A stretch of 64,000 nucleotides of DNA from IMGVR_UViG_3300023174_000040:124001-188000, one strand, 5' to 3'; counted from the stretch's first letter, positions 1,201 to 31,726 are shown. The notes: a model not told the origin generated them from the sequence alone. Numbers and translations are program-made.

Positions 1201-2052
1201 ATGATGAATAAGCGTGGAACCACCCTTGTTGAACTGCTGGTTAGCGTAACCATCATTGCAGTTTTATCTGGGCTGGTTCTCAGTGCTGTTCAAGCAACAA
1301 GAAAGTCTGCTGGTTACGTTGTTCATCTAAATTGGCTTAGACAGCGTAAATTAGATAATGCTCCCTATAGCAAGACATTAAAAATAGTCTTTATCGGTAA
1401 TAGCCATACATATTTCTCTGATATTCCAGGGGTTATTGTTGAGTTCGCAAAAACAGTAGGAGTGGAAATAAAGACTAAGGTAGTTGTTGTTGGGGGTCAA
1501 TCTTTAGAGGGTCATTGGAGTGGCCCTGATGCTCAAAACGCAATAACAAGTGAATTGAGTAATTTTGTTGTATTGCAAGATATTAGTCAGCGACCATATA
1601 CAGACCCGGATTTATATCAAGAATATGTAAAGAAATTCTGTGATCTGATCGACAATAAATCTGTTCCGATATTATACTTAGTTTGGGCACATAAAACTAA
1701 TTTATGGGTTCAAGGAAGTTTAACTGCTCAAGCTGTTCAAGCTATGAAAGACAATACCTATAGCGAAGTTTGTTTTGTTGGCGAAGCATGGAAAATAGTT
1801 CGTAATGAAAAACCAGATCTTGAATTATTTCTTGATGAAGTTCATGAAAATCCTACCGGGGCTTATTTGACAGCATGTGTTTTTCACAGTATAATTCATA
1901 GATTAGATCCAAGGGGATTGCCTTGCGAAGTTACTACTGAATCGGGGTCTACGGTTAGCGTTAGTCCTGAACTTGCAAATTATTTTCAAACAGTTGCTTG
2001 GCAAGTATCTGAAAAATACAGAAAAAAGTATAAAGCCTACTATCTAAAATGA
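1201..2052 (+). CDS. prepilin-type N-terminal leader fused to SGNH/GDSL hydrolase-like domain
   Basis: KRGTTLVELLVSVTIIAVLSGLVLSAVQATR leader; FIGNSHTY block I; DEVH catalytic DxxH. Confidence 0.75.
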   Translation: MMNKRGTTLVELLVSVTIIAVLSGLVLSAVQATRKSAGYVVHLNWLRQRKLDNAPYSKTLKIVFIGNSHTYFSDIPGVIVEFAKTVGVEIKTKVVVVGGQSLEGHWSGPDAQNAITSELSNFVVLQDISQRPYTDPDLYQEYVKKFCDLIDNKSVPILYLVWAHKTNLWVQGSLTAQAVQAMKDNTYSEVCFVGEAWKIVRNEKPDLELFLDEVHENPTGAYLTACVFHSIIHRLDPRGLPCEVTTESGSTVSVSPELANYFQTVAWQVSEKYRKKYKAYYLK

Positions 2053-2447
2053 AAACCAAGATCACCCTAAAAGATTATCTAATCAGTGTCAATTACTCAA
2101 TTACTGATGGGGCTGAATTTCTTTGGGATTGTTACGGGGAAAATGCTCGCATAATCTCAAATGATAAGAAAAGGGGCAAAAATTTTATTTGCTCTACTGG
2201 TGTGGTTTTTGATGCTGACAAGCAAACTGTTTATGAGATGACTGTTTGGGATTATGAAAAAAATGAGCAATATCGTTGGATAAGTCCGAGATATTCAAAG
2301 AAGCATAGAGAAGAAGAAATAAAAAGAGGCTTTGTGGCAGGACAATCAATTGATAAGTTAAGTTTCATTGAAGTTGAAATAGAAAAAATACTGTCGAAAG
2401 CAAAAGAACTATGCCACACAAAATCAGCAAAAAAGAAAAAATGCTAG
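2049..2447 (+). CDS. hypothetical phage protein
   Basis: ORF overlaps upstream stop; phage-like composition. Confidence 0.6.
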   Translation: MKTKITLKDYLISVNYSITDGAEFLWDCYGENARIISNDKKRGKNFICSTGVVFDADKQTVYEMTVWDYEKNEQYRWISPRYSKKHREEEIKRGFVAGQSIDKLSFIEVEIEKILSKAKELCHTKSAKKKKC

Positions 2448-2860
2448 GTTCTTTTGTCCCTGTAACAGGAGAGTTCTTGGATTTCGTAAAAAATAACACA
2501 CATATTCAATTAAATAATCTAGACCTTGAAAAAGTCTTAAATGCCTATAAGGCTTCTATAGTTAGAGGCATGGATTATGCTATAGTCGAATACTATGATA
2601 AATACAAAAAACCCAATCTCTTGTTCTTCGCTAGGGAGCATTTTAAACAAACGGTTTTGCGTCATTATTATAATTCTCTTAAATTATACAAGCCTCGTTT
2701 TAAGTGCCCTAAAAAATTAAAAAAAGATTCCAATTTTAAGAACCGCACTCACAGACTTTATCGAATCTTTGACTTGAAAAACAACAAAGATATTAGTGGA
2801 ATTCGTATGTTTGAATATTGCAAAAAAACACTTCAAAGAAAGGTCGTTGTTCCAAACTAA
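2441..2860 (+). CDS. hypothetical protein starting MLGSF
   Basis: ATG overlapping the end of the previous gene. Confidence 0.55.
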   Translation: MLGSFVPVTGEFLDFVKNNTHIQLNNLDLEKVLNAYKASIVRGMDYAIVEYYDKYKKPNLLFFAREHFKQTVLRHYYNSLKLYKPRFKCPKKLKKDSNFKNRTHRLYRIFDLKNNKDISGIRMFEYCKKTLQRKVVVPN

Positions 2861-3040
2861 AAATTAGTACCCGTATATACAACAATACCATCTTGTTGGT
2901 AACAAAAAAATAGTGGTCGATCACTATACTGTTACTGGGTTGAGGTTATCGACAGCCAATAGAGTGTAAGTTAAATTTAATATACATTACGCAGTGGTCT
3001 ACACGGAACTGCGATACTAATTTTTTTGGAAAATTTCACT

Positions 3041-3796
3041 ATGTTAAGAACCAGATTCAATTACTGGACTTGTAGCAAATTTGCAAATTGGGTTAGAGGT
3101 GAAGATAAGCCTCTTGGACTCACAATGGAAGGTTGGGAAGATTGGAGAAAGGAACAAGAGAACAAAAGACCGATTAGATATTATCTCTCCGATACTCTTC
3201 TTGGTAATCTTCAAGACTTTGTAAATTACCCTTCAGATCTCTACAATTCCATAAAAACTTATTTAAATAATAGGTTTGTAGATAAGACTCATTATTTAAA
3301 GACCGGCCTAGAGCCAGGACATTATCATGAAGTAGATGAAAAGATACTCTATGGTTTGTTTACTGAGTTATCTGAGTTTGTGGAGGATGAACTTTCTTGG
3401 ATGAATTATCTAAGCAAAGATAAAAAAGAGAGAGGAAAATATAAGAGATCCGCAGAAGGCGGTATCGAATATCTTAATTGGGCGATGGGCCTTAAAAAAG
3501 ATGAAGAAAATGGATACCAGAAAGAATATACTGAGGGTTACGGCGAGCCAACACCCCAAGCAGAATCTTCTAAAGAAATCTTAGAAATTTATAATTGGTG
3601 GAAAAACGTTAGACCATATCGTGAACATCCTCACGATATTAGCAAGTGGAGAGATATCTGCGAGAGTAGGATAAAAGATAAAGAGATTATAAGAGAGAGT
3701 CTCGATAAACTCACAAGCATCGAAGAACAATATGATAAAGAAGATGAAGATATGATGATCAGATTGATCAAAATTAGAAAAAGCTTGTGGACATGA
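3041..3796 (+). CDS. hypothetical phage protein
   Basis: 251-aa ORF; ends LIKIRKSLWT. Confidence 0.65.
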   Translation: MLRTRFNYWTCSKFANWVRGEDKPLGLTMEGWEDWRKEQENKRPIRYYLSDTLLGNLQDFVNYPSDLYNSIKTYLNNRFVDKTHYLKTGLEPGHYHEVDEKILYGLFTELSEFVEDELSWMNYLSKDKKERGKYKRSAEGGIEYLNWAMGLKKDEENGYQKEYTEGYGEPTPQAESSKEILEIYNWWKNVRPYREHPHDISKWRDICESRIKDKEIIRESLDKLTSIEEQYDKEDEDMMIRLIKIRKSLWT

Positions 3797-4053
3797 AATT
3801 CCATAAAGTTTTTATAACAATATTTATAGGAATTCTATTTTATGTCTTCCTTGGAGTAATAATATACAATCAGAGAACAACAATATACAATCAGAAAAAA
3901 AATTACATCAAACATAGAAACATAATTAGTGATTTAGAATACCAGAACAAGAAACTAGAGTATCAGAATGATAAATTAGTAAACCATATAGAAATCTTAA
4001 ATAATAGAATCGTAATCTTATCGGCAAGATCTAGTGAACTACCCACCCCCTAA
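3793..4053 (+). CDS. membrane-anchored coiled-coil protein, C-terminus altered by IS insertion
   Basis: N-terminal TM segment; removing 4034-5338 restores ...LSARSNKEEKSR-stop at 5361. Confidence 0.6.
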   Translation: MKFHKVFITIFIGILFYVFLGVIIYNQRTTIYNQKKNYIKHRNIISDLEYQNKKLEYQNDKLVNHIEILNNRIVILSARSSELPTP

Positions 4054-5338
4054 AGGGAGTGGGCTTCCTGTTTCAACCTCGGTTGCCCTTGATTGCTCTC
4101 AGGTCTTACACCAAGTCCACAGGCTATTCCCGTAGTTCCTACGGTTCTTTTCGCTTCATTAAGTATGTTAATCGCAGCATTGGTGTCACGATCATGCCTA
4201 ATCTTGCACTTCGGACACTCCCAACTACGAACACTCAACGGTAAACTTTCTACTACAAAATTACACTTTGAACAAGTCTTACTTGAAGGAAACCACCTTC
4301 CAACCTTAATGACTGTTCTACCGTGCCAGTTTGCCTTGTATTCAATTTGACGAACGAATTCGCTCATTGATACATCAGCGACACTCTTGCTCAAACACCT
4401 GTTCTTCATCATGCCACTTACATTCAAGTCTTCCAAACAAATCACTTGGTTCTCGTTGATTATTTGGCGACTTACCTTATGTAAGTGGTCATTACGGATG
4501 TTTGCTATCTTCAAGTGCAATTTTGCCAATCGTTTTCTTGATTTCTCCTTGTTTTTACTACCCTTATTTCTTCGGCTGTGTTCTTTGTTCAACATGCGTA
4601 GTCTGACTTCAAGGTTCTTGTAACTGCGGATATTCTTGTATTTCTTGCCGTCACTCAATGTTGCAAGGCTGTTGATTCCAAGATCAACGCCAACCTTGTT
4701 TTTGTTCTTTTTAAGAGGTTTGATTTCTTTTTCAACCAAGATTGAAACAAAGTATTGTCCTGCCTTATTCATAGTCAATGTTGCGTGTCGTATATTTCCG
4801 TTGATCGGACGGTGTAGTTTTACCTTTATGCCTTCATTGAACTTAGGGAAGTGTATTTTGTTTTCCTTCACCTCCACGAACTGAGGCACAGTAAAACTTT
4901 GTTTGTCTCGTCTGCTGTGGAACTTGGGTAATTTTGCTCTTTTGCTAAAGAAATTGTTATATGCTATATCAAGGCACTTTAGTTCAAACTGCAATACTTG
5001 ACTGTTGGTTCCGTACAGCCAATCCTTTTCTTTCTTGAGATTGGTCAGTTCTTTTGCTTGTTTGTAGTAGTTTGGACTTTTCTTGGTTTTGATGTATGAT
5101 GTTTTCCTCTGGTCAAGGAAGTGGTTGTACACAAACCTACAACAACCAAAGTGAATGGCTAGTTTGTTTTGTTGCTCCTTGTTCGGATACAGTCTGTATT
5201 TGTAAGTGTAGTGAACCATAATTATGCAAGGGTTTAAAGCCTGCATAATTATGTATGCACTTGAGTTGAAATTTTTTTCAGAGTTTACCGCCATTCATCC
5301 CAGCCCCTAAAGGGACTGGGTTTTCTGGCGGCGAGGAT
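4034..5338 (-). mobile_element. IS200/IS605-family (IS1341-type, tnpB-only) insertion sequence
   Basis: subterminal hairpins CCCACCCCCTAAAGGGAGTGGG (~4042) and CCCAGCCCCTAAAGGGACTGGG (~5299); right end TTCAC; TTTAT 5' of left end; empty site restores reading frame. Confidence 0.85.
4050..5219 (-). CDS. tnpB: RNA-guided endonuclease TnpB
   Basis: YKYRLYP HTH; GVDLG RuvC-I; EDL RuvC-II; CxxC..CxxC zinc ribbon; DRDTNAAINI RuvC-III. Confidence 0.95.
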   Translation of the reverse strand: MVHYTYKYRLYPNKEQQNKLAIHFGCCRFVYNHFLDQRKTSYIKTKKSPNYYKQAKELTNLKKEKDWLYGTNSQVLQFELKCLDIAYNNFFSKRAKLPKFHSRRDKQSFTVPQFVEVKENKIHFPKFNEGIKVKLHRPINGNIRHATLTMNKAGQYFVSILVEKEIKPLKKNKNKVGVDLGINSLATLSDGKKYKNIRSYKNLEVRLRMLNKEHSRRNKGSKNKEKSRKRLAKLHLKIANIRNDHLHKVSRQIINENQVICLEDLNVSGMMKNRCLSKSVADVSMSEFVRQIEYKANWHGRTVIKVGRWFPSSKTCSKCNFVVESLPLSVRSWECPKCKIRHDRDTNAAINILNEAKRTVGTTGIACGLGVRPESNQGQPRLKQEAHSL

Positions 5339-5365
5339 ATAAAGAGGAAAAATCCAGGTAATATC

Positions 5366-5743
5366 ATGCTTAAAGTTCGATTTCATTTGGGTGCTGGGGA
5401 GAATTATAAGCATTGGCAGATTCGCAACATAATTACGAATTCAGTCGAATATCATGATCCCAATAAAGTTCAATTATTGCTTATGGGATGTACGTTAAAA
5501 AATGAATCAAAAACAGCAGAGAAAGTTTTTGCTAAACAAAAGAGGGATGTTTGCGGATGGGTGCAATGCGAAAACATTGAGTTTTCATATAATTTTGTGA
5601 AACCTTCTGGCCATAGACTTTTTTATGATCCTAAAATCAGCCCCTACTGGCAATATAAAGATGATCCATCTAATCTCGATGGAATGGGATTTGAAAATTT
5701 GATTACATTAGGGCATCATATTTTTATAGAAACAAAAAACTGA
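5366..5743 (+). CDS. hypothetical phage protein
   Basis: clean ORF followed by terminator. Confidence 0.6.
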   Translation: MLKVRFHLGAGENYKHWQIRNIITNSVEYHDPNKVQLLLMGCTLKNESKTAEKVFAKQKRDVCGWVQCENIEFSYNFVKPSGHRLFYDPKISPYWQYKDDPSNLDGMGFENLITLGHHIFIETKN

Positions 5744-5780
5744 AAGAGAAAGCCATATGATTAACGGCTTTCTTTCAGTT
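5738..5780. terminator. bidirectional hairpin terminator
   Basis: AACTGAAAGAGAAAGCC...GGCTTTCTTTCAGTT between convergent genes. Confidence 0.6.
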
Positions 5781-5801
5781 ATAGGTTGAATATTAGTGGA
5801 C

Positions 5802-5981
5802 TCACTCAGAACGGGCCAGCACCCTTAGCCTCGCCCGAAAGTCGGCTCCACCGGCTGGCTCAATAACCGCAACCTTTTTTTGCTCTTTTTTATACCCTAG
5901 GGCAACGCAATAAACTAATACCCCCATACCACAGATTAGGGTTATTGCTATTCCCATTATAAAAAGAAAGAAATTATCCAT
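5802..5981 (-). CDS. small membrane protein
   Basis: MDNFFLFIMGIAITLICGMG hydrophobic segment; TAATG overlap with upstream gene. Confidence 0.55.
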   Translation of the reverse strand: MDNFFLFIMGIAITLICGMGVLVYCVALGYKKEQKKVAVIEPAGGADFRARLRVLARSE

Positions 5982-6130
5982 TAATCGAAATACCTCCCTA
6001 GACACAATATGCTAGGAACCCATATTCCAACAAAAATAGCTTGATTTTCATTTTTAAATAAAAACCATATGGTTACACTCAAAACAAAACTTAAAAATGC
6101 TGCTGTTATAAACAAATATCTACTTTTCAT
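5981..6130 (-). CDS. small 2-TM membrane protein (49 aa, absent from ORF track)
   Basis: MKSRYLFITAAFLSFVLSVTIWF...AIFVGIWVPSIL; GGAG upstream. Confidence 0.55.
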   Translation of the reverse strand: MKSRYLFITAAFLSFVLSVTIWFLFKNENQAIFVGIWVPSILCLGRYFD

Positions 6131-6155
6131 TCTTTTTGTCTCCTTTTTTTAGATC

Positions 6156-6338
6156 TCATCGAGTCTTTTTGACCCAAGGCTTGTTGTCAACTAACAATTC
6201 TTCTCTAACAATACTACAGTTCTTTGGGGCTTCCACGCCTATCCTTGCTCTATTTCCCTCGACACTTACAAGGGTAATCGTTACGTTTAATTCTGGGATG
6301 TGAATTTTTTCGCTTTCCTTGCGGCACAGCACTAGCAC
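6156..6338 (-). CDS. csrA: carbon storage regulator CsrA/RsmA
   Basis: MLVLxRKxxExI...V+IGVEAPK..IVREEL family signature. Confidence 0.85.
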   Translation of the reverse strand: MLVLCRKESEKIHIPELNVTITLVSVEGNRARIGVEAPKNCSIVREELLVDNKPWVKKTR

Positions 6339-6415
6339 TATATGTTCCTTTTGTTTTATTTTTAGAAAAATCAGACAACAAAAACAATATAGCAGGTCAG
6401 TCCAAAAGAGTCAAG

Positions 6416-6441
6416 TTTCTTTCGGGTACGGTTGTTGGTAG
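6416..6441 (+). promoter_or_regulatory. GGTACGG-N9-R motif, first of ~50 copies (class A, GTTTCYYTYYGGTACGGT)
   Basis: class A cores at 6425, 8508, 10652, 12675, 15366, 18209, 22573, 27422, 29429, 44340, 44658, 45372; all intergenic and + strand. Confidence 0.75.
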
Positions 6442-6473
6442 GAACAGATTAAAACTTTTTTTAAGAGACCAAT

Positions 6474-6719
6474 ATGAAGTACGCTAAAATTACTGGTAAT
6501 GGTGAATTTCCACTGGATATGCTCCGGTATGATACTGCATCCCCTGCCACAGAGGAAATGAGCAGTAAGATTGAGGGTACAATCAAGAACTACCAGCGTG
6601 GTTGGGAAGTCTACGTTAAAAGCGAAAGCAAGTTTCCTTGGACTGTGGGGCGTTGGGAAAGTTTTGGTTGCAAGATTGAAAGTATGCCCAAGAATTGGAG
6701 TACGGGATGTATTCGTTAA
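6474..6719 (+). CDS. hypothetical phage protein (FPxDMLRYD family)
   Basis: FPLDMLRYD...TVGRWESFG; directly after a motif copy. Confidence 0.65.
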   Translation: MKYAKITGNGEFPLDMLRYDTASPATEEMSSKIEGTIKNYQRGWEVYVKSESKFPWTVGRWESFGCKIESMPKNWSTGCIR

Positions 6720-6825
6720 TTATTATTTCTGTATTATCTATTTTGTTTTCAATTGGCATTGCCTTGAGTCCAATTCCTTGGATTATATTTGGAATGATTG
6801 ATCGTCTTATTCAAAGGTATTTGTA

Positions 6826-7035
6826 ATGAATAATCTTGATATTGCCGAATACAAAAACAAAACCGATTGGTATTTTGAGAATGAATACAGCACACTTCCT
6901 CTTTATGAGATTCTGGCGAATTATCCAGAGAGCATTTATGATGGAGTGGACAGCATCATAGAAGAAGCCCACGCAAAGGGCTTGCATTTTATTGAGACTG
7001 CCCGTATGCTCCGAGACTTTCTTGGAGAAATGTAA
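6826..7035 (+). CDS. hypothetical protein
   Basis: TAATG coupling at both ends. Confidence 0.55.
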   Translation: MNNLDIAEYKNKTDWYFENEYSTLPLYEILANYPESIYDGVDSIIEEAHAKGLHFIETARMLRDFLGEM

Positions 7036-7226
7036 TGAATGAACCTAATGTAAAAAGCCAAAAATGCAATTGTGGAAGCGGTAAGATTAGCGAGTGGATC
7101 TACGATGGATATAATATTCCATTGACTAAATGCTGTTCTAGTTGTAAAAAAGAAAAGTTGGGTAAATTTCGTACGGATATTATGAGTCAATATGACGCAT
7201 ATGAACCCATCGAACCGGAATTTTGA
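7035..7226 (+). CDS. small Cys-rich (SEC-C-like CxCGSGK) protein
   Basis: CNCGSGK and CCSSC. Confidence 0.55.
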   Translation: MNEPNVKSQKCNCGSGKISEWIYDGYNIPLTKCCSSCKKEKLGKFRTDIMSQYDAYEPIEPEF

Positions 7227-7368
7227 ATAGGTTAGGTAAGATGGGCAAAACAATTTATTCCACTTGCCAAAATTGATTCAATGCACTACAGTATTCTGGT
7301 TCCCGGTATGGGGAGTTTGATTAGGAGGAAACATATCATACCATATGTTTCATTTCATGGAGGTTAGT

Positions 7369-7776
7369 ATGAATCGTCTTGTTGCTGCTCTTTTTGTTTG
7401 TGTTCTGATTAGCGGTGTTGCTCACGCTCGTCCTCGACGCAGTTATAACACCTATAATACCCCGACTTATTCTGCCCCAAAGACATACAGTTATACTGGG
7501 GAAGATACCCCACGGCAATATAGTTATACTTCTGAAACTCCAACCAGAAGTTATAGCAATACCAGTTCGGCTCAGGGTGTTGCCGAAATCATGGCTCGTA
7601 CGGGCCGTGTTGGTCACTGGGGGGGCAACAATGGGTATGAGGGTTGCGGGAGCGGTTCCTCCCAACAGGCCGCATACAACAACTGCTGCTATGCTAATAG
7701 CAACCTCACGACTGTTGACGTAGGTTATGCACAAGGCAATAATGGCAAATGGTATTGCTGCCGCCGTTATCGCTAA
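7369..7776 (+). CDS. secreted Cys-rich protein, CAP/SCP-like C-terminus
   Basis: signal peptide ending VAHA; MAR..GH...EG.G..CCY..GKWYCC; GGAGG RBS. Confidence 0.55.
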   Translation: MNRLVAALFVCVLISGVAHARPRRSYNTYNTPTYSAPKTYSYTGEDTPRQYSYTSETPTRSYSNTSSAQGVAEIMARTGRVGHWGGNNGYEGCGSGSSQQAAYNNCCYANSNLTTVDVGYAQGNNGKWYCCRRYR

Positions 7777-7792
7777 TCTAATTTATTGTTAA

Positions 7793-7863
7793 AAACCCTC
7801 CGCACGACACTCTAATAGGTTCGTGACCCTAATAGGTTCGTGCGGAGGGTTATTTTATTTTTT
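7793..7863 (+). terminator. rho-independent terminator
   Basis: AACCCTCCGCACGA...TCGTGCGGAGGGTT followed by T-run. Confidence 0.7.
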
Positions 7864-8475
7864 ATGAAAAAAATTACTATTTTGGGTGATGTTCACGGCA
7901 AATATAGACGTATGCACGAAATAATTCGTGAGAAAGATCGTCATGAATACATAGTCCAAATTGGCGACCTGGGTTTCGATTTTTCTACATTAGATAATGT
8001 CGATCCAAAAAAGTTTGTTATTGTCGGCGGTAATCACGATAACTATTCAAAAATAATTAATATTCCACATTATCTTGGCGACTATGGATACATGGTTAAT
8101 TTCAACGGAATAGATTTTTTCTACTACCGTGGAGCATATAGTATTGATAAACAATACAGAACTATCGGAATTGATTGGTGGTCAGAAGAACAAGTGTCTG
8201 TTGAACAATTCATGAAGGCTAGGGAACTTTATAGAAGCATCAAGCCGGATATTATGCTCACGCATGATTGTCCGGAAACTATTTCTCCTTATTTGTTGGA
8301 TCCACATACTCAGATGTATCAAAATCAAACAGGATATTTCTTGCAAGAATTGTTTAATATTCACCAACCAAAAAGTTGGTATTTTGGACACTACCATAAG
8401 AGTTGGCAAATGACAGTCAATGGAACTAATTTTAGATGCTTAAATGAATTAGAAACTTGTAGTCTTGAAATATAA
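7864..8475 (+). CDS. calcineurin-like metallophosphoesterase
   Basis: GDVHG, GDLG, GNHD, THD, GHYH motifs. Confidence 0.9.
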   Translation: MKKITILGDVHGKYRRMHEIIREKDRHEYIVQIGDLGFDFSTLDNVDPKKFVIVGGNHDNYSKIINIPHYLGDYGYMVNFNGIDFFYYRGAYSIDKQYRTIGIDWWSEEQVSVEQFMKARELYRSIKPDIMLTHDCPETISPYLLDPHTQMYQNQTGYFLQELFNIHQPKSWYFGHYHKSWQMTVNGTNFRCLNELETCSLEI

Positions 8476-8555
8476 TCCCCCCCTCCTTGCCCTCCTGGTT
8501 TCCCTGCGGTACGGTTTGGTATCGGGTAGACTTCACAAATACAGGAGAAAAATAA

Positions 8556-8831
8556 ATGAGTGATATTACGATTCGTATGCCGGCTGGCGGTGTTAGTCTG
8601 CCAGATAATGCACAGTGGACTAACCGTATCCAGATTCGCAGCGAAAGCAGCAATCGCATCTATATTGTTGCACAGAATAAGGAATCTGGTCGTTGGGGCT
8701 GTTCTTGTCCTGCATATTGTAGCCGTCGATATTGCAAGCATCTTTTGAATGGTTGTAATCTTGATCCTAGTGAGATTCACGGCAATACTGCCATTGCCGA
8801 TAATCGTCCTAAGAACAAGAGGCTGAAGTAA
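8556..8831 (+). CDS. SWIM zinc-finger protein
   Basis: WGCSCPAYCSRRYCKH. Confidence 0.75.
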   Translation: MSDITIRMPAGGVSLPDNAQWTNRIQIRSESSNRIYIVAQNKESGRWGCSCPAYCSRRYCKHLLNGCNLDPSEIHGNTAIADNRPKNKRLK

Positions 8832-9208
8832 TGTCTCACCCATATCATCACTCTATCAGTAGTGCTAAAAAGTGGGGAGGAATTCCCGCCGATTATCAGG
8901 CCATTCATGATTGGTTTGATGAAAGCAAGAGTCATATGGCCGATATTCGCCATCGTGCTTTGAGGCATCATAGCGAAGGAATCTTTATGTGTGAAAAGAT
9001 TTTCGGCATTACAATCACCAATAGCAATGGCAGGGAAATTCCTGTTCGTTTTATTGGCGAGCAGCACGTTAAAGAAGATTTGGGATTCATCCCCACTGTC
9101 AGCGATTATTTTCGTGAGATGAAAATTAAGAGTTGGATGACAGGCAACAGGGATTTTAAGGCTCCGACAGTCTTTGAAATGAAAGACGAAGAAGAAGTTT
9201 CAGTTTAA
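8831..9208 (+). CDS. DUF6915-like protein
   Basis: HPYHHSxSSAKKWGG..DY..IHDWFDESK..RHRALRHH..EQHVKED. Confidence 0.7.
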   Translation: MSHPYHHSISSAKKWGGIPADYQAIHDWFDESKSHMADIRHRALRHHSEGIFMCEKIFGITITNSNGREIPVRFIGEQHVKEDLGFIPTVSDYFREMKIKSWMTGNRDFKAPTVFEMKDEEEVSV

Positions 9209-9517
9209 TGTCCCCGTTAGGAGATTAGGTTATGGAAAACAAGTTCTGCGAACTCGGTGAAAAAATCCTTAAACTCATGGAAGAATACAACATGAAAGTT
9301 TACGATTTAGAATTCATCAACGAACTGATTGAAAAAACTGTTGAGCGTGATGAAAAAGAGTGTTCTTATTAGGGTTTTGGCCCTATTTTTGGCCACTTAA
9401 TTGAACTTTACCGAGCGGGAAATTTTTGGTATATTTAGTGTTTTTTTAACGTAAATTTCCCCGCTCGGTAAAGTTTTTCCTATTTTTTTGGCCGCTATTT
9501 TGGCCGGTTCCAAAAAT

Positions 9518-9910
9518 ATGAATAAAAAACTTCTTGATATTTTTGTTGATCCAAAAATTCTTCTCAAAGAAGCAATAGAAAAAGATCTAAAAGAGATTGA
9601 AAAATTTCTTAAGAAAAAGATCTATGTGGTTGAATACTGGCATCTAGACGGAAAAGAATTAAAAACTGTTAGGAAAATAAAAGATCAATTAATTCTTCTC
9701 GGTAAGAATCTTGATATAATGGAAAACATAAAGTCTAAAACTTATCGCTATCATTGTTTCCGCATCAAATCATCTATAGATATAGATGATTTAAGAGAAT
9801 TGTTGAGAGTTTTTACAAGAAATACTATAGAAGCACTTATTAATCAAAAAATTCAAGTAGAATGTTCTACTAACGACGCCCAGCAGTGCATAATAGAATG
9901 TCCAGAATAA
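9518..9910 (+). CDS. hypothetical protein
   Basis: ORF from ATG 9518. Confidence 0.55.
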   Translation: MNKKLLDIFVDPKILLKEAIEKDLKEIEKFLKKKIYVVEYWHLDGKELKTVRKIKDQLILLGKNLDIMENIKSKTYRYHCFRIKSSIDIDDLRELLRVFTRNTIEALINQKIQVECSTNDAQQCIIECPE

Positions 9911-10428
9911 ACAATGACAAACACAGAAATTTTCATCACAGGTTATCTGCTAGGTATTGTTGGCATAGTTGCGATTTTATCTAGAAATATTCAAAAAGAA
10001 ATGAAACTACAAGATAAAATTAATAGTCTCTTATCTAAAAGAGTAGATATTCTTTCAGACCAATTAGATGCTGTTTATGAAATAGTCAAACTAGAGTCAA
10101 AAAGATTAGACATTTACAATGATGACAATAATGATGCTGATTGGTGGAAAAATAAATAAACCCAATACATCAAATTTCCGACTCTATTATCCTCTTGTGC
10201 AGGTCATTTATTATCTCTGAATAGAAATTTTCATTGAACTTTTTATCATTTTCTGCTCTAATCATGGCTTCATAGTGAAGTACGTTAAAAGAAAACGAGC
10301 CAATTAAAAAAGAAACTAAAAAAATCACTAATAATCTATATTTCATTATGTCCTCCAACTTATCTATGAGTATTCGATTTTATATTTTGTTAGGATTTGA
10401 TTAGTGAAATCTTTAGAAGGAGTTTTTC

Positions 10429-10635
10429 ATGGAAGAAAAAATTAAAAATATCATTTTCAATAAGTTCAATAGAGAGGTTGATAAAAACACAAATCTCTCA
10501 GAACTGGTAGAAGATAGTTTTGCCAAAGTTGAAATGCTATTTGCCATAGAAGAAGAATTGGGTAAGAGATTGACCGAGGACGAAATTCTTCAGATAGAAA
10601 ATATCGGGGATATTATAAACGTTTTCCAAAAGTAG
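10429..10635 (+). CDS. acyl carrier protein-like
   Basis: acidic 68 aa; EDSFAKVEMLFAIEEELG resembles the DSL phosphopantetheine helix. Confidence 0.65.
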   Translation: MEEKIKNIIFNKFNREVDKNTNLSELVEDSFAKVEMLFAIEEELGKRLTEDEILQIENIGDIINVFQK

Positions 10636-10667
10636 CCAGAAGTTTCCCTCCGGTACGGTTTGAGGAT

Positions 10668-11180
10668 ATGGGAAATCCCGATTATATCCGGCTTAATCTG
10701 GAGCGGGTTAGTGATCTTGGCGATATGCTAATCACTAAATCGAAAGAATTCTATGATACCGCAATATCAAATCTTAAAATAGAATTAAGATTTGATACCG
10801 TTAGCAATTATCATGGATCTCCTTTGAATGAAGAAACTAATTGGGGCGGTTATAAGAAACATATACCAACGGGATATAACGGCTGGATCGGTAGTATTAG
10901 TTGTCTTGTAAATTCTAATCAAAATCCATATTGCCGTATAGGGCATCTCACCGACGCAGACCAGCATCTTTTTGGCTATAAAGGATTCAGGGGATTCCAT
11001 ACAGGTAGTGGTTGTCCCGGTCATAAATTCGGAAAATGTCCAATGAATATTGGATTCTATTTCTTTATGGATGACTTTCCACTTTTGAAATCAAGATATG
11101 ATAAGTGGAAGATATTGAGTAGTTTTGAGAAGAATAAGAGTTGGGAAAATTCAAACCTTAATTACGAACAAGGATTGTGA
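10668..11180 (+). CDS. hypothetical protein, candidate leaderless gene
   Basis: ATG 9 nt after GGTACGG; ILSSF near C-terminus. Confidence 0.65.
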   Translation: MGNPDYIRLNLERVSDLGDMLITKSKEFYDTAISNLKIELRFDTVSNYHGSPLNEETNWGGYKKHIPTGYNGWIGSISCLVNSNQNPYCRIGHLTDADQHLFGYKGFRGFHTGSGCPGHKFGKCPMNIGFYFFMDDFPLLKSRYDKWKILSSFEKNKSWENSNLNYEQGL

Positions 11181-11869
11181 ACATGAGAATTAAAATTGAT
11201 ATGTATGTTTCAAAGAAGGACAGGCAGGCAGAGAATATTATTCTCAATGCCATTCCTTGCAAATATGAAGCAGCACACAAGGCGTGTGAATATGCTCGAC
11301 ATGTTCTAATGAAGCCTTGGCCCAAGGCCGAGAAAACAATTCTTCAGTGTCCACGAAGTAGTTATCTTTATGCCAGATATGTATTGAAAAAGCGTTGGCC
11401 GGAAGCAGAATCTATTATCGCAAAAGAAGCGTATAGCAGTTACTCTTATTCAAGGTTTGTTATCAAGGGAAGGTTTAAACTCGCTGAGAATAATAAAACA
11501 GAAGGATCTGTTTTTAATCCTCGTTGGGATACTAACTATAGTTTTCTTTATGCAAAAAACATTTCAAAAGAAAGGCTCAAAAGGTCAGTTGAAAATAAGA
11601 TTGCTTGCTCAAGCAGGAATGTTGATTACGCAAAAACCTTCTTGAAAAATAGAAGGTGGAAGACGGCAGAAAAATGGATTTTAGACCAAGGATATTGTAA
11701 GATACAAGAATATATGAAGATTCTTACTGAAAAAGATAAGAAGGATTTTCACAAAAAAATATTGTTGAGTGCGATGGCAAAGCAGCAAAGTCATTATAAT
11801 CCTGCTAAGGTTTGGATTGAAACTTATGGTCAAGATTTCTTGAAGGAGAGTACTAGTGGGATTGGATAA
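11177..11869 (+). CDS. helical-repeat phage protein
   Basis: several YARxVLxxxWPxAE repeats. Confidence 0.65.
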   Translation: MNMRIKIDMYVSKKDRQAENIILNAIPCKYEAAHKACEYARHVLMKPWPKAEKTILQCPRSSYLYARYVLKKRWPEAESIIAKEAYSSYSYSRFVIKGRFKLAENNKTEGSVFNPRWDTNYSFLYAKNISKERLKRSVENKIACSSRNVDYAKTFLKNRRWKTAEKWILDQGYCKIQEYMKILTEKDKKDFHKKILLSAMAKQQSHYNPAKVWIETYGQDFLKESTSGIG

Positions 11870-12194: not shown

Positions 12195-12208
12195 AAAGAG
12201 AAATTAAA

Positions 12209-12649: not shown

Positions 12650-12694
12650 GATCAAGAGGATCAAGTTTCCCTCTGGTACGGTTGTGGGTTGTCC

Positions 12695-17917: not shown

Positions 17918-17926
17918 GGAAACAAA

Positions 17927-20778: not shown

Positions 20779-20781
20779 AAA

Positions 20782-25956: not shown

Positions 25957-26337
25957 ATGAAAATAGAAATGACAGAAGATGATTTAGTGCTAGCGGCAAA
26001 TAAAATAAGAAAAAATATTCATAGAAATATGATAAAACAAATAAAATCAGGAAGAAAGGCTAAGGATTTAGTTGGAAAGGTTCAAGAATATCTTGAAAAA
26101 AGCAAATTAGACTCGTTTTTAATGCTTGAAGAAACTGTTCTAATTATGAGAGCCTTCTGCAAAAAGAAAAATGATCTACTAATCATAAGCGATGATGAAA
26201 AAACAGCAGAGAAAATAGCTAATGATCTTTTCCAAAGAGGGGTAAATAATATATTGAATATCATGGCAAAAGAAGATGTTCTAGATTGTAGTTTTGACAA
26301 TGATACTAATGATTTTTATTTCAATATGAAACAATGA
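25957..26337 (+). CDS. hypothetical protein
   Basis: ORF. Confidence 0.55.
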   Translation: MKIEMTEDDLVLAANKIRKNIHRNMIKQIKSGRKAKDLVGKVQEYLEKSKLDSFLMLEETVLIMRAFCKKKNDLLIISDDEKTAEKIANDLFQRGVNNILNIMAKEDVLDCSFDNDTNDFYFNMKQ

Positions 26338-27269
26338 AAAAATATAATTGCTTAATAATGAATAATGAGGTCTGGCTCCTGGAGGCTAGACTGGAGTATG
26401 ACTTAAAATATTTTGATTTTATAATTTTAGCCGAAGCAAATTCTACTTTTAGCGGTTTAAGTAAGCCCTTTTTCTATGAAAAATATAAAGACATATTTAA
26501 AAAATATGAAGATAGGATCTTATATGTTAAACTCGAAAATTTACCAAAACCATACAAGGGTAATTTTTTAGGACATAATAATTTCAAGGCAAAAGAAAAT
26601 CGTTGGATAGTTGAATTTTACCATAGAAACTATTTACAAAACGCAATACTGCAGATTGCCAAAGAAGGAGATTTGATTTGCAACCAAGATATTGATGAAA
26701 TTCAAAATATAGATTCTTTAAACAAAATAGACAATCTAAATTACATAAATTATTTATCGTACTATGATTTTAGATTCACTATTTTAGATGATCCATTATC
26801 AAATTTTGCAGAAAAGGCATGGCACAAAGGCTTTGTAACTTCTTTTGAAAATTTACAAAAAATCAATATACACGACTATAGGAATATAAATAAGCATGAT
26901 GATTATTTTTACTTAAGTCATATCACCCCGGCAGATTTTAGATTCGATGATCAAGATCAAAATCACATGGTGTATAATTCATACAGGGCCCCTGTCCAAG
27001 ACATTAGCATTATTTACTCACCAATTGGTTGGCATGTATCATCTATGTCTTGTCACTCAGATAATAACACAAAAGTAAAATGTTTTGCACATCAAGAATT
27101 CGCAAACACTTTTGATAAAATTATAGATTTTGACTTAGAAAAAACAACAGAAGATATCGTAAATAAATTCATAGACAAAGATGATAAGAATGAAATTCAT
27201 GCGTTAGCACCACAATTTTTGCAAAATTCAAGATTCACCTCTCTATTCAAACAGCATTTAAAGGAGTAA
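26334..27269 (+). CDS. GT17-like (beta-1,4-GlcNAc transferase-like) glycosyltransferase
   Basis: NE..LLE.RL; EAN.TFSG..KP; DIDEI; GWH; FAHQE. Confidence 0.75.
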   Translation: MKKYNCLIMNNEVWLLEARLEYDLKYFDFIILAEANSTFSGLSKPFFYEKYKDIFKKYEDRILYVKLENLPKPYKGNFLGHNNFKAKENRWIVEFYHRNYLQNAILQIAKEGDLICNQDIDEIQNIDSLNKIDNLNYINYLSYYDFRFTILDDPLSNFAEKAWHKGFVTSFENLQKINIHDYRNINKHDDYFYLSHITPADFRFDDQDQNHMVYNSYRAPVQDISIIYSPIGWHVSSMSCHSDNNTKVKCFAHQEFANTFDKIIDFDLEKTTEDIVNKFIDKDDKNEIHALAPQFLQNSRFTSLFKQHLKE

Positions 27270-29660: not shown

Positions 29661-30035
29661 ATGAAAACTAAACTTTCTTTTGAAAAACTTGAAAATAAGA
29701 TTACTCTGAGTTCCATTAATCTTTCCCTTCCTAATGTTCATAGCCAACCAGAAGTTTATCACTTACAGCAAAAACATATAAAGGAAACGAAATTTTCTTC
29801 TCAATTGCATAATTGCTTATGGAAAGAGCATGGCAATTACTTTCAAAATAATTATAATATTAAAAATCCAAATCAGTCACAAATAATAATCACCAAGTCT
29901 GGTCAGATTATAAATTATATTCCACCTACGCCTACTCGGCCTTTCCCGCTTTTTATTGAAATAAAGTTTCCTGATAGGCCAATCGGTCGTCCAAGCCCAC
30001 CTATCCAAATTAGCCCGCCTATCCAGATCAAATGA
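29661..30035 (+). CDS. protein with planctomycete-type LEPRxLL-like leader and Pro-rich tail
   Basis: MKTKLSFEKLENKITLS resembles RLxxExLExRxLLA. Confidence 0.55.
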   Translation: MKTKLSFEKLENKITLSSINLSLPNVHSQPEVYHLQQKHIKETKFSSQLHNCLWKEHGNYFQNNYNIKNPNQSQIIITKSGQIINYIPPTPTRPFPLFIEIKFPDRPIGRPSPPIQISPPIQIK

Positions 30036-30263
30036 CATATCAAGAAGAAGTCAAAAAACTTTCTGAGATATTTGGAATATCAATCTATAGAGGGAATAAT
30101 TCTATAGTAGCATATCCTCCAATCGGAAATGTATTTGATGCTAGTTATCTTCATTTAGCAGATGCTCCATTGTATGAAGATGTTGAAAAAACATATAAGA
30201 TTCTTAAAGATCAAATAGGGACTGGAATTCTTCCTTGTGAAGATCCAAATTGCACTTATTGCC

Positions 30264-30740
30264 ATGTCTAAATCCAAACTTCTCAATAGTTTTCTTCCAT
30301 TAGAAATTCAGTTAGAAGATGCTGCTAAAAAAGATCTAAAGTATATTCTCCAAAAGAAAAAAGATAGTGAAAAACTATCAAATGATTTTTATAAGATATA
30401 CAATAAATTCGTTAAGGCCAACCCAGATATAACCGATATTATCGAAGTAAACAATGTTGACGCTACAGGACAATTTCCCGGTATTGCAAGAGATTTGATT
30501 TCTGTAGCGAAAGAAATAGTTGTTGATAATGATGGATTCGTATTTGATTTTAGTTGGGATGAATCAGACTTTGACTTACATGACCGTAATCACATGTCAA
30601 ATCTATTGGTGTGTTTTTCAAATACATTTAAAATATTTGAAAAACTTCACCAAAAGAATCAGTTCTTTACAGTTCAAGTAGAAGATAGAAATGTGACTGT
30701 AGATTGGGGATTTGAACAAGGATTCATGTATTATGACTAG
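30264..30740 (+). CDS. hypothetical protein starting MSKSKLLNSF
   Basis: ATG overlapping the end of the previous gene. Confidence 0.6.
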   Translation: MSKSKLLNSFLPLEIQLEDAAKKDLKYILQKKKDSEKLSNDFYKIYNKFVKANPDITDIIEVNNVDATGQFPGIARDLISVAKEIVVDNDGFVFDFSWDESDFDLHDRNHMSNLLVCFSNTFKIFEKLHQKNQFFTVQVEDRNVTVDWGFEQGFMYYD

Positions 30741-31441
30741 CCAGATAAACAAAATCAAAAAATATGATCATCACCTTGCTAGTAAAATAGAAGAACAGCA
30801 TGGGTTTTTAACCTCTGGCGATATTGAGCGATTATCTGATTTTTTACCCGATCATATGGTTTTAGTTCGTTGTGGTAACGGCAGATTTATTACTCGGGCG
30901 TCAAGTGCAAATCATTTTGTTGATGTTGTGCGTTGTAGCCATGATTATGTCAGGGATGTATCTTTACTTGTAGATGATTATAAAGTAAACTAATTCCAAT
31001 ATGGAGAATAATAATGATTGTAAAAAATGATCCCAGCAATATCTCAAAACGAGGTCTTGACAAAAACAAACTATCCTATACAATCAAAATATTACATTGA
31101 TAAAACTTATGGAATTTACTTGGCGGCGGAGTCTTTCCATTAATTTGAAAGAAATGAAAAAAAACGAAATCACAATCCAGCGTGACTCGTTTGATTTGTT
31201 CGACTAATGAGCAAAAGGCTTTGGAGAATGAATAACTAATGGAAGATAATTACTCTTACATACAATCTCAAAGAATTCAAAAAGAAAAGCAATACTGGAC
31301 AAAATTAAGACAACTATCAGATAATGATAATGTTAAAGAATTCTATCAATTATATATGGAATATTTAGAGTGGAGTAATATTCTATCTAACGACAGAAAA
31401 GCAATTTATAAAATGGCTAAAAAAATAGCGGAGAATAACTA

Positions 31442-31726
31442 ATGACTGAAATTAAAATGAAAAAAGGATTTACACTTGTAGAGGCTTTGGCTTATTTGTT
31501 TATTGTTTTGACTCTTATTGGGCTATTAGTCCCGGCAATTCAACAATCTCTCATCAACAATAATAAGCCCACAGAGAATGGTGAGAAGCCTATGCCAGAT
31601 GGTCGGATGTATAACTTTGTTACTGTGAAGCACGACAACCATCTTTTTATAAGAGATGGGCATGATATTATTCATCATCCTGATTGTCCTTGTTTCACAC
31701 TAACTGCCGAAAAGGGAGAAAAATAA
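31442..31726 (+). CDS. prepilin-type leader protein
   Basis: KKGFTLVEALAYLFIVLTLIGLLVPAIQQ; HHPDCPC. Confidence 0.7.
   Translation: MTEIKMKKGFTLVEALAYLFIVLTLIGLLVPAIQQSLINNNKPTENGEKPMPDGRMYNFVTVKHDNHLFIRDGHDIIHHPDCPCFTLTAEKGEK

What the first reader, a model, noticed from the sequence alone, without database searches (positions are those of the whole stretch)
1201..31726. Planctomycete-style export leaders on phage proteins
Seen: two prepilin leaders of the DUF1559 style (G-x-TL(V/I)E...L..A(V/I)Q) at 1201, fused to an SGNH hydrolase, and at 31442. A LEPRxLL-like leader at 29661 and a CAP-like secreted protein at 7369 are also present. Known: DUF1559 prepilin-like proteins and the RLxxExLExRxLLA leader are greatly expanded in Planctomycetota. 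Inference: the host is a planctomycete, a group with few characterised phages, and the phage routes an esterase or decoy pilin through host prepilin peptidase to modify the cell surface or block superinfection.
Basis: partly seen in the sequence, partly recalled or inferred. Interest (0 to 1): 0.6.

Follow-up and report, generated by a model that had tools for sequence, protein, structure and literature searches.

The report
Prepilin-tagged proteins on a Planctomycete-linked jumbo phage
An uncultured freshwater jumbo phage carries two genes with the pilin-type export tag typical of Planctomycetes, one fused to an intact esterase; this points to a little-studied host group and to a phage using the host's pilin-processing route.

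Summary
The core observation holds. The window is part of a 323 kb IMG/VR phage fragment (rIIA, baseplate and tail genes) found in lake metagenomes.

**Two prepilin-tagged genes**
- 1201-2052 and 31442-31726 carry class III (prepilin) signal peptides. They are the only two in the record.
- The first is fused to a confidently modelled SGNH hydrolase with Ser, Asp and His conserved. It is under purifying selection.

**Links to Planctomycetota**
- Among 185,579 species genomes, the listed cellular relatives that clearly match tag, linker and enzyme together lie in five DUF1559-rich Planctomycete MAGs.
- The tag style (A-[VI]-Q at fixed spacing) occurs 9-107 times in such genomes and 0-2 times elsewhere.
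- A related phage carries a true DUF1559 gene.
- The secreted protein at 7369 is 78% identical to a chromosomal protein of Anatilimnocola (Pirellulaceae).

**Not confirmed**
- The LEPRxLL-like leader at 29661 matches no family model.
- The "CAP-like" label has no significant support.
- "Decoy pilin" is unlikely. The small protein's His/Cys mini-domain also occurs on ordinary membrane and lipoprotein anchors.

No CRISPR spacer match was found, so the host assignment is strong inference, not proof. The mechanism (host prepilin peptidase processing, envelope glycan de-acetylation) is inferred.

The parts
1201..2052 (+). P0001: prepilin-type (class III) signal peptide, a conserved helical linker (one helix, residues 9-50), and an SGNH/DUF4886-like esterase domain (residues about 57-283).
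   Evidence: N_methyl 24.1 bits, over the cut-off. AF2 pLDDT 93.4. SGNH fold matches in PDB. Ser68 and His215 invariant, Asp212 in at least 90%, across 40 relatives. dN/dS 0.15 against the sister phage L083.
1201..1320 (+). The class III signal itself: leader ending in Gly6, Glu11 at +5, hydrophobic helix, then S-A-V-Q 17 residues after the Glu (Planctomycete DUF1559 style).
   Evidence: Read from the translation. The same spacing is seen in dozens of DUF1559 genes per Planctomycete genome.
31442..31726 (+). P0002: small prepilin-type protein. The likely true start is the Met at 31457 (MKKG|FTLVE). It has a P-A-I-Q motif and a C-terminal His/Cys mini-domain (HDNH ... HHPDCPC).
   Evidence: N_methyl 20.5 and 21.5 bits. 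24 close relatives with invariant H64, H67, H78, H79, C82 and C84. Wider family of 255 clusters.
7369..7776 (+). P0004: Sec-signal secreted protein with a Tyr/Ser/Thr-rich linker and a very conserved 72-residue Cys-rich C-terminal domain. Not shown to be CAP.
   Evidence: 494 relatives. Alignment. 78% identical to WP_425613828.1 of Anatilimnocola sp. NA78. No Pfam or PDB match.
29661..30035 (+). P0003: hypothetical protein whose N-terminus loosely resembles the Planctomycete extracellular motif. Not confirmed.
   Evidence: No PF07595 match at E<=10. No Atlas look-alikes. The strict form of the motif is absent from the record's ORFs.
8831..9208 (+). DUF6915 gene. It is part of the host-link evidence only.
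   Evidence: Pfam 161.8 bits. 67-79% nucleotide identity to four Planctomycetia genomes. No gene-length match in 151 Verrucomicrobiota.

Best explanation
The window is an accessory-gene region of an uncultured freshwater jumbo phage whose host is most likely a member of Planctomycetota, probably a DUF1559-rich lineage of class Planctomycetia.

The phage has taken up, and keeps under selection, genes whose products carry the host's own pilin-type (class III) export tag.

P0001 is a copy of a rare Planctomycete gene family in which a pseudopilin-like N-terminal helix carries an SGNH carbohydrate-type esterase. In the infected cell it would be inserted into the cytoplasmic membrane and cut after Gly6 by the host prepilin peptidase. 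Its catalytic domain would face the periplasm or surface, either anchored or built into a pseudopilus. I think it most likely removes O-acetyl groups from an envelope glycan. That would change the cell surface during infection, by destroying a receptor, excluding other phages, or helping release.

P0002 is a second, much smaller cargo on the same kind of tag. It is a probable metal-binding His/Cys mini-domain held at the outer face of the membrane.

Shown: the tags, the fold, the conserved catalytic residues, selection, and the taxonomic links. Inferred: the host, the cleavage, the location, the substrate and the benefit to the phage.
For: **The tags are real.**
- These are the only two in 323 kb.
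- Gly at -1 is kept in the phage copies and Glu at +5 in every tagged copy.

**The enzyme looks functional.**
- AF2 pLDDT is 93.4, with one helix over residues 9-50 and then an alpha/beta fold.
- PDB neighbours are SGNH and DUF4886 proteins and acetyl-xylan esterases.
- Ser68 and His215 are invariant; Asp212 is kept in at least 90%.
- dN/dS is 0.15.

**Links to Planctomycetes.**
- In a scan of 185,579 species genomes, the top-scoring matches covering tag, linker and enzyme were L003-L006. L009 matches tag, linker and the first part of the enzyme before the frame breaks. Four of the five records are titled Planctomycetia, Planctomycetota or Planctomycetaceae; L006 is an 'uncultured bacterium'. 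Most other listed hits match only the domain, at about 30%, across many phyla.
- Those MAGs each hold 28-74 DUF1559 genes. Neighbours of the gene include PSCyt2/PSD1 and DUF1501.
- The best ESM Atlas structural match (TM 0.88, full length) is a cluster that is 71% N_methyl and commonest in Planctomycetota.
- The tag pattern T-L-[VIM]-E, then 17 residues, then A-[VIM]-Q occurs 9-63 times in each of the five MAGs and up to 107 times in other DUF1559-rich genomes. It occurs 0-2 times per genome in 151 Verrucomicrobiota and 0-1 times in five genomes of five phyla (Verrucomicrobiota among them).
- The related phage contig L087 shares 11 ORFs with this phage at 32-79% identity. About 1.4 kb downstream of its P0002 homologue it carries a true DUF1559 gene (141 bits, E 7.6e-41).
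- P0004's C-terminal domain is 78% identical to a chromosomal Anatilimnocola protein. It occurs in 3 of 201 genomes of that order.
- Gene-length DNA matches were found in 6 of 301 Planctomycetia and 0 of 151 Verrucomicrobiota.

**The processing enzyme.** No prepilin peptidase was found in the phage fragment. One is present in all five Planctomycete genomes tested.

**Habitat.** Lake and freshwater metagenomes from 12 studies hold the sequence. Phages of Planctomycetes, including fragments over 300 kb, have been predicted in such lakes (PMC9040852).
Against: - No direct host link. The short DNA matches were not in CRISPR arrays. The collection-wide scan of species genomes was already spent, so spacers could only be sought in samples.
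- Phage GC is 35.8%, against 47-70% in the five Planctomycete contigs. Relatives of the phage range up to 50% GC. From my own knowledge, phiKZ shows that jumbo phages can lie about 30 points below their host.
- The A-[VI]-Q tag style is not exclusive. About 17 true examples occur among 151 Verrucomicrobiota.
- Full-tag P0001 relatives are rare even in Planctomycetes, and gene sharing can reflect transfer without infection.
- The record is only about 64% complete, so a phage-encoded peptidase cannot be excluded.
- The SGNH block III Asn was not identified (an invariant Gln126 stands out instead), and the DUF4886 HMM is below its cut-off (22.8 against 26.7 bits).
- No expression data exist; no RNA run holds the sequence.
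- Substrate, cleavage and biological effect are untested.
Confidence: 0.6

Rival explanations
1. The host is not a Planctomycete. The phage infects another freshwater bacterium (for example a Verrucomicrobium or another lineage with pilin-like gene expansions), and the Planctomycete-like genes arrived by transfer or convergent tag evolution.
For: The A-[VI]-Q tag occurs at 0-2 copies in 19 of 151 Verrucomicrobiota. Phage GC of 36% is far below the Planctomycete contigs. No CRISPR link was found. TnpB is only 41% identical to Planctomycetia copies.
Against: Four different genes or features (P0001, the two tags, P0004, DUF6915), plus DUF1559 in a related phage, all point to the same phylum. No gene-length match was found in the Verrucomicrobiota control. 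The whole wider P0002 family carries the same P-A-[VI] tag style.
Confidence: 0.2
2. The prepilin-like N-termini are used only as uncleaved signal anchors. The proteins are ordinary membrane-tethered periplasmic proteins, and the pilin machinery plays no part.
For: The P0002 mini-domain also occurs on plain transmembrane and lipoprotein anchors, so the anchor type is interchangeable. P0001 has Thr rather than Phe or Met at +1.
Against: Gly at -1 is kept in the phage copies and a charged Glu at +5 inside the hydrophobic helix is kept in all tagged copies, phage and bacterial. From general knowledge of type IV pilins, that combination is the signature of peptidase processing and fibre assembly, not of simple anchoring.
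Confidence: 0.2
3. P0001 is a lysis helper. It would be an O-acetyl-peptidoglycan esterase placed at the periplasmic face so that cell-wall lytic enzymes can act at the end of infection.
For: SGNH fold. Peptidoglycan O-acetyl-transferase and esterase catalytic domains appear among weaker fold matches (8tlb, 5ufy). A membrane anchor facing the wall fits.
Against: The best fold matches are carbohydrate esterases and DUF4886, not Ape or OatA. No lysis genes were identified next to it. The bacterial homologues sit in ordinary chromosomal context, one beside a sialate-type acetylesterase.
Confidence: 0.12
4. P0001 is an auxiliary metabolic gene. It would keep up the host's pilus-linked polysaccharide uptake and degradation during infection and would not alter the host surface.
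For: The gene is a copy of a host family. Acetyl-xylan esterase-like neighbours appear in PDB. Planctomycete pili from crateriform structures are proposed to serve polysaccharide uptake (PMC12673574).
Against: The host family is rare: one full-tag match among 401 sampled genomes, and that was the anchor genome itself. It is therefore not a core pathway step. The neighbouring phage genes show no metabolic theme.
Confidence: 0.12

Closest known systems
Planctomycete DUF1559 (Pfam PF07596, SBP_bac_10) prepilin-like proteins
   Same: Same class III signal with the same spacing to the A-[VI]-Q motif. A related phage carries a true member (P0053, 141 bits).
   Different: P0001 and P0002 lack the DUF1559 body; no match was found in the record at E<=10. 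Their cargo is an SGNH esterase and a His/Cys mini-domain.
Chromosomal prepilin-SGNH fusion proteins of a few Planctomycete MAGs (L003-L006, L009)
   Same: Same architecture end to end, including the conserved linker (LNW.RQR.LD) and catalytic residues. 40-51% identity.
   Different: They are cellular genes in GC-rich chromosomal context. They are uncharacterised, so they give no known function.
SGNH hydrolases of the DUF4886 / acetyl-xylan esterase kind (PDB 4i8i, 4s1p, 7ddy, Axe2)
   Same: Same fold, with a conserved Ser (GNSHT) and Asp-x-x-His.
   Different: 13-24% identity only. The DUF4886 HMM is below its cut-off. None of them has a pilin-type N-terminus.
Virion-borne phage SGNH esterases (tail spike and tail fibre esterases)
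   Same: A phage-encoded SGNH domain acting on host surface glycans is an established theme. The BFVD matches include tail spike and fibre proteins.
   Different: Those listed are 377-1,293-residue proteins, several named tail spike or fibre. P0001 is 283 residues, has no tail domains, and carries a membrane export tag, so it would act from inside the infected cell.
Phage proteins that block type IV pili for superinfection exclusion (Tip, Aqs1, PfsE; from my own knowledge)
   Same: Possible shared outcome: a phage interfering with the host pilus system.
   Different: Those are small cytoplasmic or membrane inhibitors of PilB or PilC, not pilin-like substrates. No homology was tested or claimed.

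Membership tests
Type IV pilin-like proteins (class III signal; Pfam N_methyl PF07963 / TIGR02532) | HMM match over the curated cut-off | tested here: met
   P0001: 24.1 bits (cut-off 21.2) and TIGR02532 18.2 bits (cut-off 16.3). P0002: 20.5 bits in hmmscan, 21.5 bits in the six-frame search, so borderline.
Type IV pilin-like proteins (class III signal; Pfam N_methyl PF07963 / TIGR02532) | Short basic leader, Gly at -1, Glu at +5, about 20 hydrophobic residues | tested here: met
   Read from the translations. Conserved in relatives.
Type IV pilin-like proteins (class III signal; Pfam N_methyl PF07963 / TIGR02532) | Cleavage and N-methylation by a prepilin peptidase; assembly into a fibre | not testable with these tools
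   Only indirect: no peptidase found in the phage fragment; one present in the Planctomycete genomes tested.
DUF1559 (PF07596) | DUF1559 body domain | tested here: not met
   No match in the whole record at E<=10 and none in hmmscan. The control P0053 from a related phage scores 141 bits.
DUF1559 (PF07596) | Leader style: A-[VI]-Q 17 residues after the +5 Glu | tested here: met
   Present in both proteins. The pattern occurs 9-107 times per DUF1559-rich genome and 0-2 times elsewhere.
SGNH hydrolase superfamily | Alpha/beta/alpha fold | tested here: met
   AF2 pLDDT 93.4. Foldseek 4s1p E 3.4e-9, 4i8i E 4.5e-8.
SGNH hydrolase superfamily | Block I Ser and block V Asp-x-x-His | tested here: met
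   Ser68 and His215 invariant, Asp212 in at least 90%, in 40 sequences.
SGNH hydrolase superfamily | Block II Gly and block III Asn (oxyanion hole) | tested here: inconclusive
   Gly99 is nearly invariant. No conserved G-x-N-D was seen; an invariant Gln126 stands out instead. Coordinates were not inspected.
SGNH hydrolase superfamily | Esterase activity | not testable with these tools
   Needs an enzyme assay.
Planc_extracel (PF07595) leader | HMM match to the RLxxExLExRxLL motif | tested here: not met
   No match for P0003 or anywhere in the record at E<=10. The strict regex is absent from the record's ORFs.
CAP / SCP / PR-1 (PF00188) | HMM or profile match to the CAP domain | tested here: inconclusive
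   No Pfam or PDB hit. The Atlas gives only a 0.88 lead to a Planctomycete CAP cluster. hhalign to two Anatilimnocola CAP proteins gives 21-column matches at 2-3% probability.

The most novel reading that the evidence does not exclude
Jumbo phages of Planctomycetes load their own cargo onto the host's hugely expanded pseudopilin system. Phage-encoded pilin-like proteins (an esterase, a metal-binding mini-domain, and in relatives whole DUF1559 proteins) would be cut by host PilD and built into the crateriform-pit fibres. That would re-tool or disable the cell's fibre-based uptake apparatus, which may also be the phage receptor. This would be the first phage use of class III signal peptides as a delivery route, and it would give a handle on the unknown function of DUF1559 proteins.
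Probability: 0.12. Interest if true: 0.8.

Novelty: new variant of a known kind. Interest (0 to 1): 0.55.

Why it matters
Phages of Planctomycetota are almost unstudied. A 2025 review of the phylum mentions phages only once, in passing (PMC12673574), and earlier host calls are metagenomic predictions (PMC9040852, PMC6802176).

This finding gives a gene-based host marker for a whole group of lake jumbo phages, namely pilin-type tags in Planctomycete style, sometimes with full DUF1559 genes. It also gives three conserved exported phage proteins that are absent from PHROGs and from 50,697 GenBank phage records.

If the tags are processed by the host peptidase, this is a route of phage protein export that I found no report of. 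It would also offer an experimental way into the function of the enigmatic DUF1559 and pseudopilin expansion of Planctomycetes.

Tried and rejected
- **CRISPR or near-identical DNA.** I searched window 1-20000 against 301 Planctomycetia and 151 Verrucomicrobiota. The short 26-46 nt matches I checked were not in repeat arrays. One exact 27-mer in a Verrucomicrobium lies in an ordinary non-repeat region. No spacer evidence either way. Only one third of the window and a sample of genomes were searched.
- **TnpB (4050-5294) as a host marker.** The best Planctomycetia match is 41%, which is uninformative.
- **AF2 model of P0002.** pLDDT 62, too poor for a fold search.
- **Negatives in the 'phylum of G001' sample**. 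These are weak, because only about 5% of that sample are DUF1559-rich genomes and the tool does not name the group.
- **Family tests.** Planc_extracel and CAP are covered under membership. A post-hoc regex for the P0003 motif is unique in the record, but it was derived from the sequence itself, so it is no evidence.
- **Other searches.** Literature: no paper combines DUF1559 with phage. GenBank phages: only one 30% domain-only hit for P0001. rIIA is at most 33% identical to any cultured phage, so no close cultured relative gives a host.
- **Not run.** Read laying (no RNA run holds the sequence). Complex prediction (no binding claim is made).


Full report
**What the window is.** The 64 kb window is bases 124001-188000 of a linear IMG/VR virus record of 323,267 bp. 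CheckV puts it at about 64% complete, and its GC is 35.8%. It is a tailed phage. Elsewhere the record encodes rIIA (PHROG E 1e-75), baseplate-wedge and virion structural proteins, and a minor tail protein. The window itself is a dense run of small, mostly co-directional accessory genes (87% coding in a crude ORF call). Among them are glycosyltransferases, methyltransferases, a MoxR-type ATPase with a DUF2201 partner, and a TnpB. Near-identical DNA occurs in lake and freshwater metagenomes from 12 studies, and none of those runs is RNA. No cultured phage is close: rIIA is at most 33% identical to any GenBank phage.

**The two prepilin tags are real.** P0001 (1201-2052) begins with a short basic leader ending in Gly6. 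Thr-Thr-Leu-Val-Glu follows, which places Glu at +5, and then comes a hydrophobic helix. Pfam N_methyl scores 24.1 bits against a cut-off of 21.2, and TIGR02532 is also over its cut-off. P0002 (31442-31726) has Lys-Lys-Gly|Phe-Thr-Leu-Val-Glu. It scores 20.5 bits in hmmscan and 21.5 bits in a six-frame scan. Most of its relatives start at the Met that corresponds to base 31457. A six-frame HMM scan and a regex scan of all ORFs find no third such motif in the 323 kb. In both proteins an A-[VI]-Q motif lies 17 residues after the Glu, which is the spacing seen in DUF1559 proteins.

**P0001 is a pilin-helix-plus-esterase fusion.**
- With a 40-sequence alignment AlphaFold2 gives pLDDT 93.4. It shows one long helix (residues 9-50) followed by an alpha/beta/alpha domain.
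- Foldseek finds SGNH hydrolases first: 4s1p, the DUF4886 protein 4i8i, then acetyl-xylan esterases.
- Ser68 (in G-N-S-H-T) and His215 are invariant. Asp212 is kept in at least 90% of sequences.
- I did not see the block III Asn. An invariant Gln126 stands out instead.
- The DUF4886 HMM is below threshold (22.8 against 26.7 bits).
- Against the ortholog in a sister phage (L083, a 251 kb IMG/VR contig, 94% identical), dN/dS is 0.15. The gene is therefore maintained by selection.
- Viral SGNH proteins in BFVD are larger proteins of 377-1,293 residues, several named tail spike or fibre. P0001 is small and carries an export tag, so it would act from within the infected cell rather than from the virion.

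**Where its relatives live.**
- A word-based search found 19 relatives. Leader-bearing full-length proteins run from 97% down to 42% identity, all from metagenomes, and there are two leaderless proteins at about 30%.
- A scan of one genome for each of 185,579 prokaryote species gave more than 500 domain matches in many phyla.
- The matches that clearly cover tag, linker and enzyme were L003, L004, L005 and L006. L009 covers tag, linker and the first part of the enzyme, and its frame appears to break after that. Four of the five records are titled Planctomycetia, Planctomycetota or Planctomycetaceae, and L006 is an 'uncultured bacterium'. Two weak hits (28-29%) in an Acidobacteriota MAG and a Marvinbryantia MAG also begin near residue 2. 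I did not check their N-termini for a tag.
- All five genomes hold 28-74 DUF1559 genes each. Neighbours of the gene include PSCyt2/PSD1 and DUF1501, which I take (from my own knowledge) to be typical Planctomycete families, and in one case a sialate-type acetylesterase. These are chromosomal genes, not misplaced phage contigs.
- Independently, the best structural match in the ESM Atlas (TM 0.88 over residues 2-279) is a cluster with N_methyl in 71% of members. That cluster is commonest in Planctomycetota, whereas the domain-only clusters belong to other phyla.
- The fusion is rare. In a 401-genome sample drawn around one of the MAGs, only that MAG had it.

**Is the tag style diagnostic?** I turned T-L-[VIM]-E, then 17 residues, then A-[VIM]-Q into a degenerate DNA pattern.

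| Genomes searched | Matches per genome |
|---|---|
| Five Planctomycete MAGs | 9-63 (reversed-pattern control 0) |
| One genome each of Chthoniobacterales (Verrucomicrobiota), Proteobacteria, Acidobacteriota, Herpetosiphon, Clostridium | 0-1 |
| 151 Verrucomicrobiota | 0-2 (19 genomes with any; about 17 true pilin leaders) |
| 151 genomes from the phylum of the first MAG | Bimodal: 7 genomes with 26-107, the rest 0-2 |

In the last sample only about 1 in 20 genomes is rich in DUF1559. The style is therefore hugely enriched in DUF1559-rich Planctomycetes but is not exclusive to them. One leader alone would prove little. Two leaders, plus the points below, carry more weight.

**P0002 is not a classical pilin.**
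- It has 24 close relatives (66-89% identity) on metagenomic contigs of up to 383 kb. H64, H67, H78, H79, C82 and C84 are invariant.
- An exhaustive profile search found 255 clusters. Most are proteins of 75-115 residues.
- The conserved part is a roughly 45-residue mini-domain (V-x-H-D-G-H ... H-H-P-D-C-P-C). It sits behind prepilin tags of the same P-A-[VI] style, but also behind plain transmembrane helices and one lipoprotein-type signal.
- Two very long proteins carry 10-13 tandem copies of the mini-domain.
- The contexts examined look like phage: strings of small co-directional genes.
- The AF2 model is poor (pLDDT 62).
- I read P0002 as a small, probably metal-binding domain held at the outer face of the membrane, not as a decoy pilin.

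**A related phage carries a true DUF1559 gene.** Contig L087 (79.7 kb; the 16 kb fetched has GC 50%) shares 11 ORFs with this phage at 32-79% identity. They include the P0002 homologue (79%), a ligase, the MoxR-type ATPase and DUF2201. About 1.4 kb downstream of its small prepilin gene lies a 301-residue protein. That protein scores 141 bits on DUF1559 (E 7.6e-41), has an N_methyl tag, and has an H-x9-D-G motif. No DUF1559 body is present in the record studied here.

**Two further links.**
- P0004 (start 7369) has a Sec-type signal peptide, a variable Tyr/Ser/Thr-rich linker, and a 72-residue Cys-rich domain that is almost invariant across the aligned relatives; the search found 494 in all. 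Atlas clusters of this protein are labelled viral.
- One relative, 78% identical over the domain, is WP_425613828.1 of Anatilimnocola sp. NA78 (Pirellulaceae). It lies in ordinary chromosomal context. The domain occurs in 3 of 201 sampled genomes of that order.
- A DNA search with window 1-20000 gave gene-length matches (143-212 nt, 67-73% identity) in 6 of 301 Planctomycetia. These were to the P0004 domain and to the DUF6915 gene at 8831-9208.
- The same search in 151 Verrucomicrobiota gave only 27-46 nt matches.

**What did not hold.**
- The 'LEPRxLL-like' leader at 29661 has no Planc_extracel match at E<=10 anywhere in the record. P0003 has no look-alikes.
- 'CAP-like' for P0004 has no Pfam, NCBIfam or PDB-profile support. 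There is only a 0.88 Atlas lead and two 21-column hhalign matches at 2-3% probability.
- None of P0001-P0004 falls in a PHROG. P0002 and the P0004 domain have no match in 50,697 GenBank phage records, and P0001 has only one 30% domain-only hit.

**Host inference.** Five kinds of evidence converge on Planctomycetota, most likely a DUF1559-rich Planctomycetia lineage:
- the relatives of P0001 that match it end to end;
- the tag style;
- DUF1559 in a related phage;
- the P0004 domain in Pirellulales;
- DNA-level matches found only in the Planctomycetia sample.

Against this, no CRISPR spacer was found, and the GC gap is large. However, related phages span 35-50% GC, and phiKZ-like phages show similar gaps (my own knowledge). 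I put the host call at about 0.75. Metagenomic phages of lake Planctomycetes, including fragments over 300 kb, have been reported before (PMC9040852; PMC6802176), so the host call itself is not new in kind.

**Mechanism.**
- Shown: class III tags with Gly(-1) and Glu(+5); an intact SGNH catalytic Ser, Asp and His; purifying selection; no Peptidase_A24 in the phage fragment; and one to three Peptidase_A24 matches in each of five Planctomycete genomes.
- Inferred: host PilD cuts P0001 after Gly6. The long helix anchors it in the membrane or places it in a pseudopilus. The esterase removes O-acetyl groups from an envelope glycan, changing the surface of the infected cell.
- Rivals: an uncleaved signal anchor; a peptidoglycan de-O-acetylase that helps lysis; an auxiliary metabolic esterase; or a non-Planctomycete host.

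**Limits.**
- The genome tool does not name the groups it samples, so negatives from those samples are weak.
- The collection-wide genome scan could be run only once.
- Only one third of the window was used for DNA searches.
- The record is incomplete.

**Verdict.** The central observation is confirmed and two side observations are not. This is a new variant of known themes (phage morons with host export signals; phage SGNH esterases) in a poorly known phage-host system.

Noticed in passing
window 4050-5294 (-): IS200/IS605-type TnpB (OrfB_IS605 96.5 bits, Cas12f1-like TNB, HTH). The near-identical sister phage L083 goes straight from the homologue of 3787-4053 to that of 5366-5743, so this looks like a recent insertion in this strain.
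   Followed up: partly
window 35339-35848 (+): Homologue of Tad3, the type I Thoeris inhibitor (Pfam PF25185, 119.5 bits, E 8.9e-35). A likely anti-defence gene.
   Followed up: no
window 6156-6338 (-): Phage-encoded CsrA homologue (Pfam CsrA 62.9 bits), a post-transcriptional global regulator.
   Followed up: no
window 15439-17917 (+): MoxR-type AAA ATPase followed by a DUF2201 metallopeptidase/VWA-like protein. The pair is conserved (47-51% identity) in related phage contigs.
   Followed up: partly
window 19292-21363, 26334-27269, 38341-40283: Several sugar-modifying genes: two GT2 glycosyltransferases, a GT17-like transferase and three methyltransferase-domain proteins. They may fit a surface or DNA glycan-modification theme.
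   Followed up: no
window 52000-60000: GC rises to 42-48% against 31-40% in the rest of the window. ORFs there are short and on mixed strands. Possibly a foreign or non-coding-rich segment.
   Followed up: no
window 48326-48414 (+): ARAGORN calls an 89-nt tRNA-Ser with the unusual anticodon ACT. Three ordinary tRNAs (Lys, Glu, Gln) lie at 46407, 50364 and 62340.
   Followed up: no
P0196 (2119 aa, 142 kb ENA contig) and P0240 (687 aa): Very long metagenomic proteins with 13 and 10 tandem copies of the HHPDCPC mini-domain found at the C-terminus of P0002.
   Followed up: no
L124:7001-7291 and L124:8547-8858: Another phage-like contig (61.5 kb) carries two small N_methyl-tagged genes about 1.3 kb apart. 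Multiple prepilin-tagged genes per phage may therefore be common in this group.
   Followed up: no
window 10429-10635 (+): The small ORF reads like an acyl-carrier-protein-type sequence by eye. This was not tested against families.
   Followed up: no
G000 6455-10915 and 12241-16428 (outside the window): Two proteins of about 1,400-1,500 residues with RCC1-like ('regulator of chromosome condensation') repeats (PHROG E 1e-61 and 3e-19).
   Followed up: no
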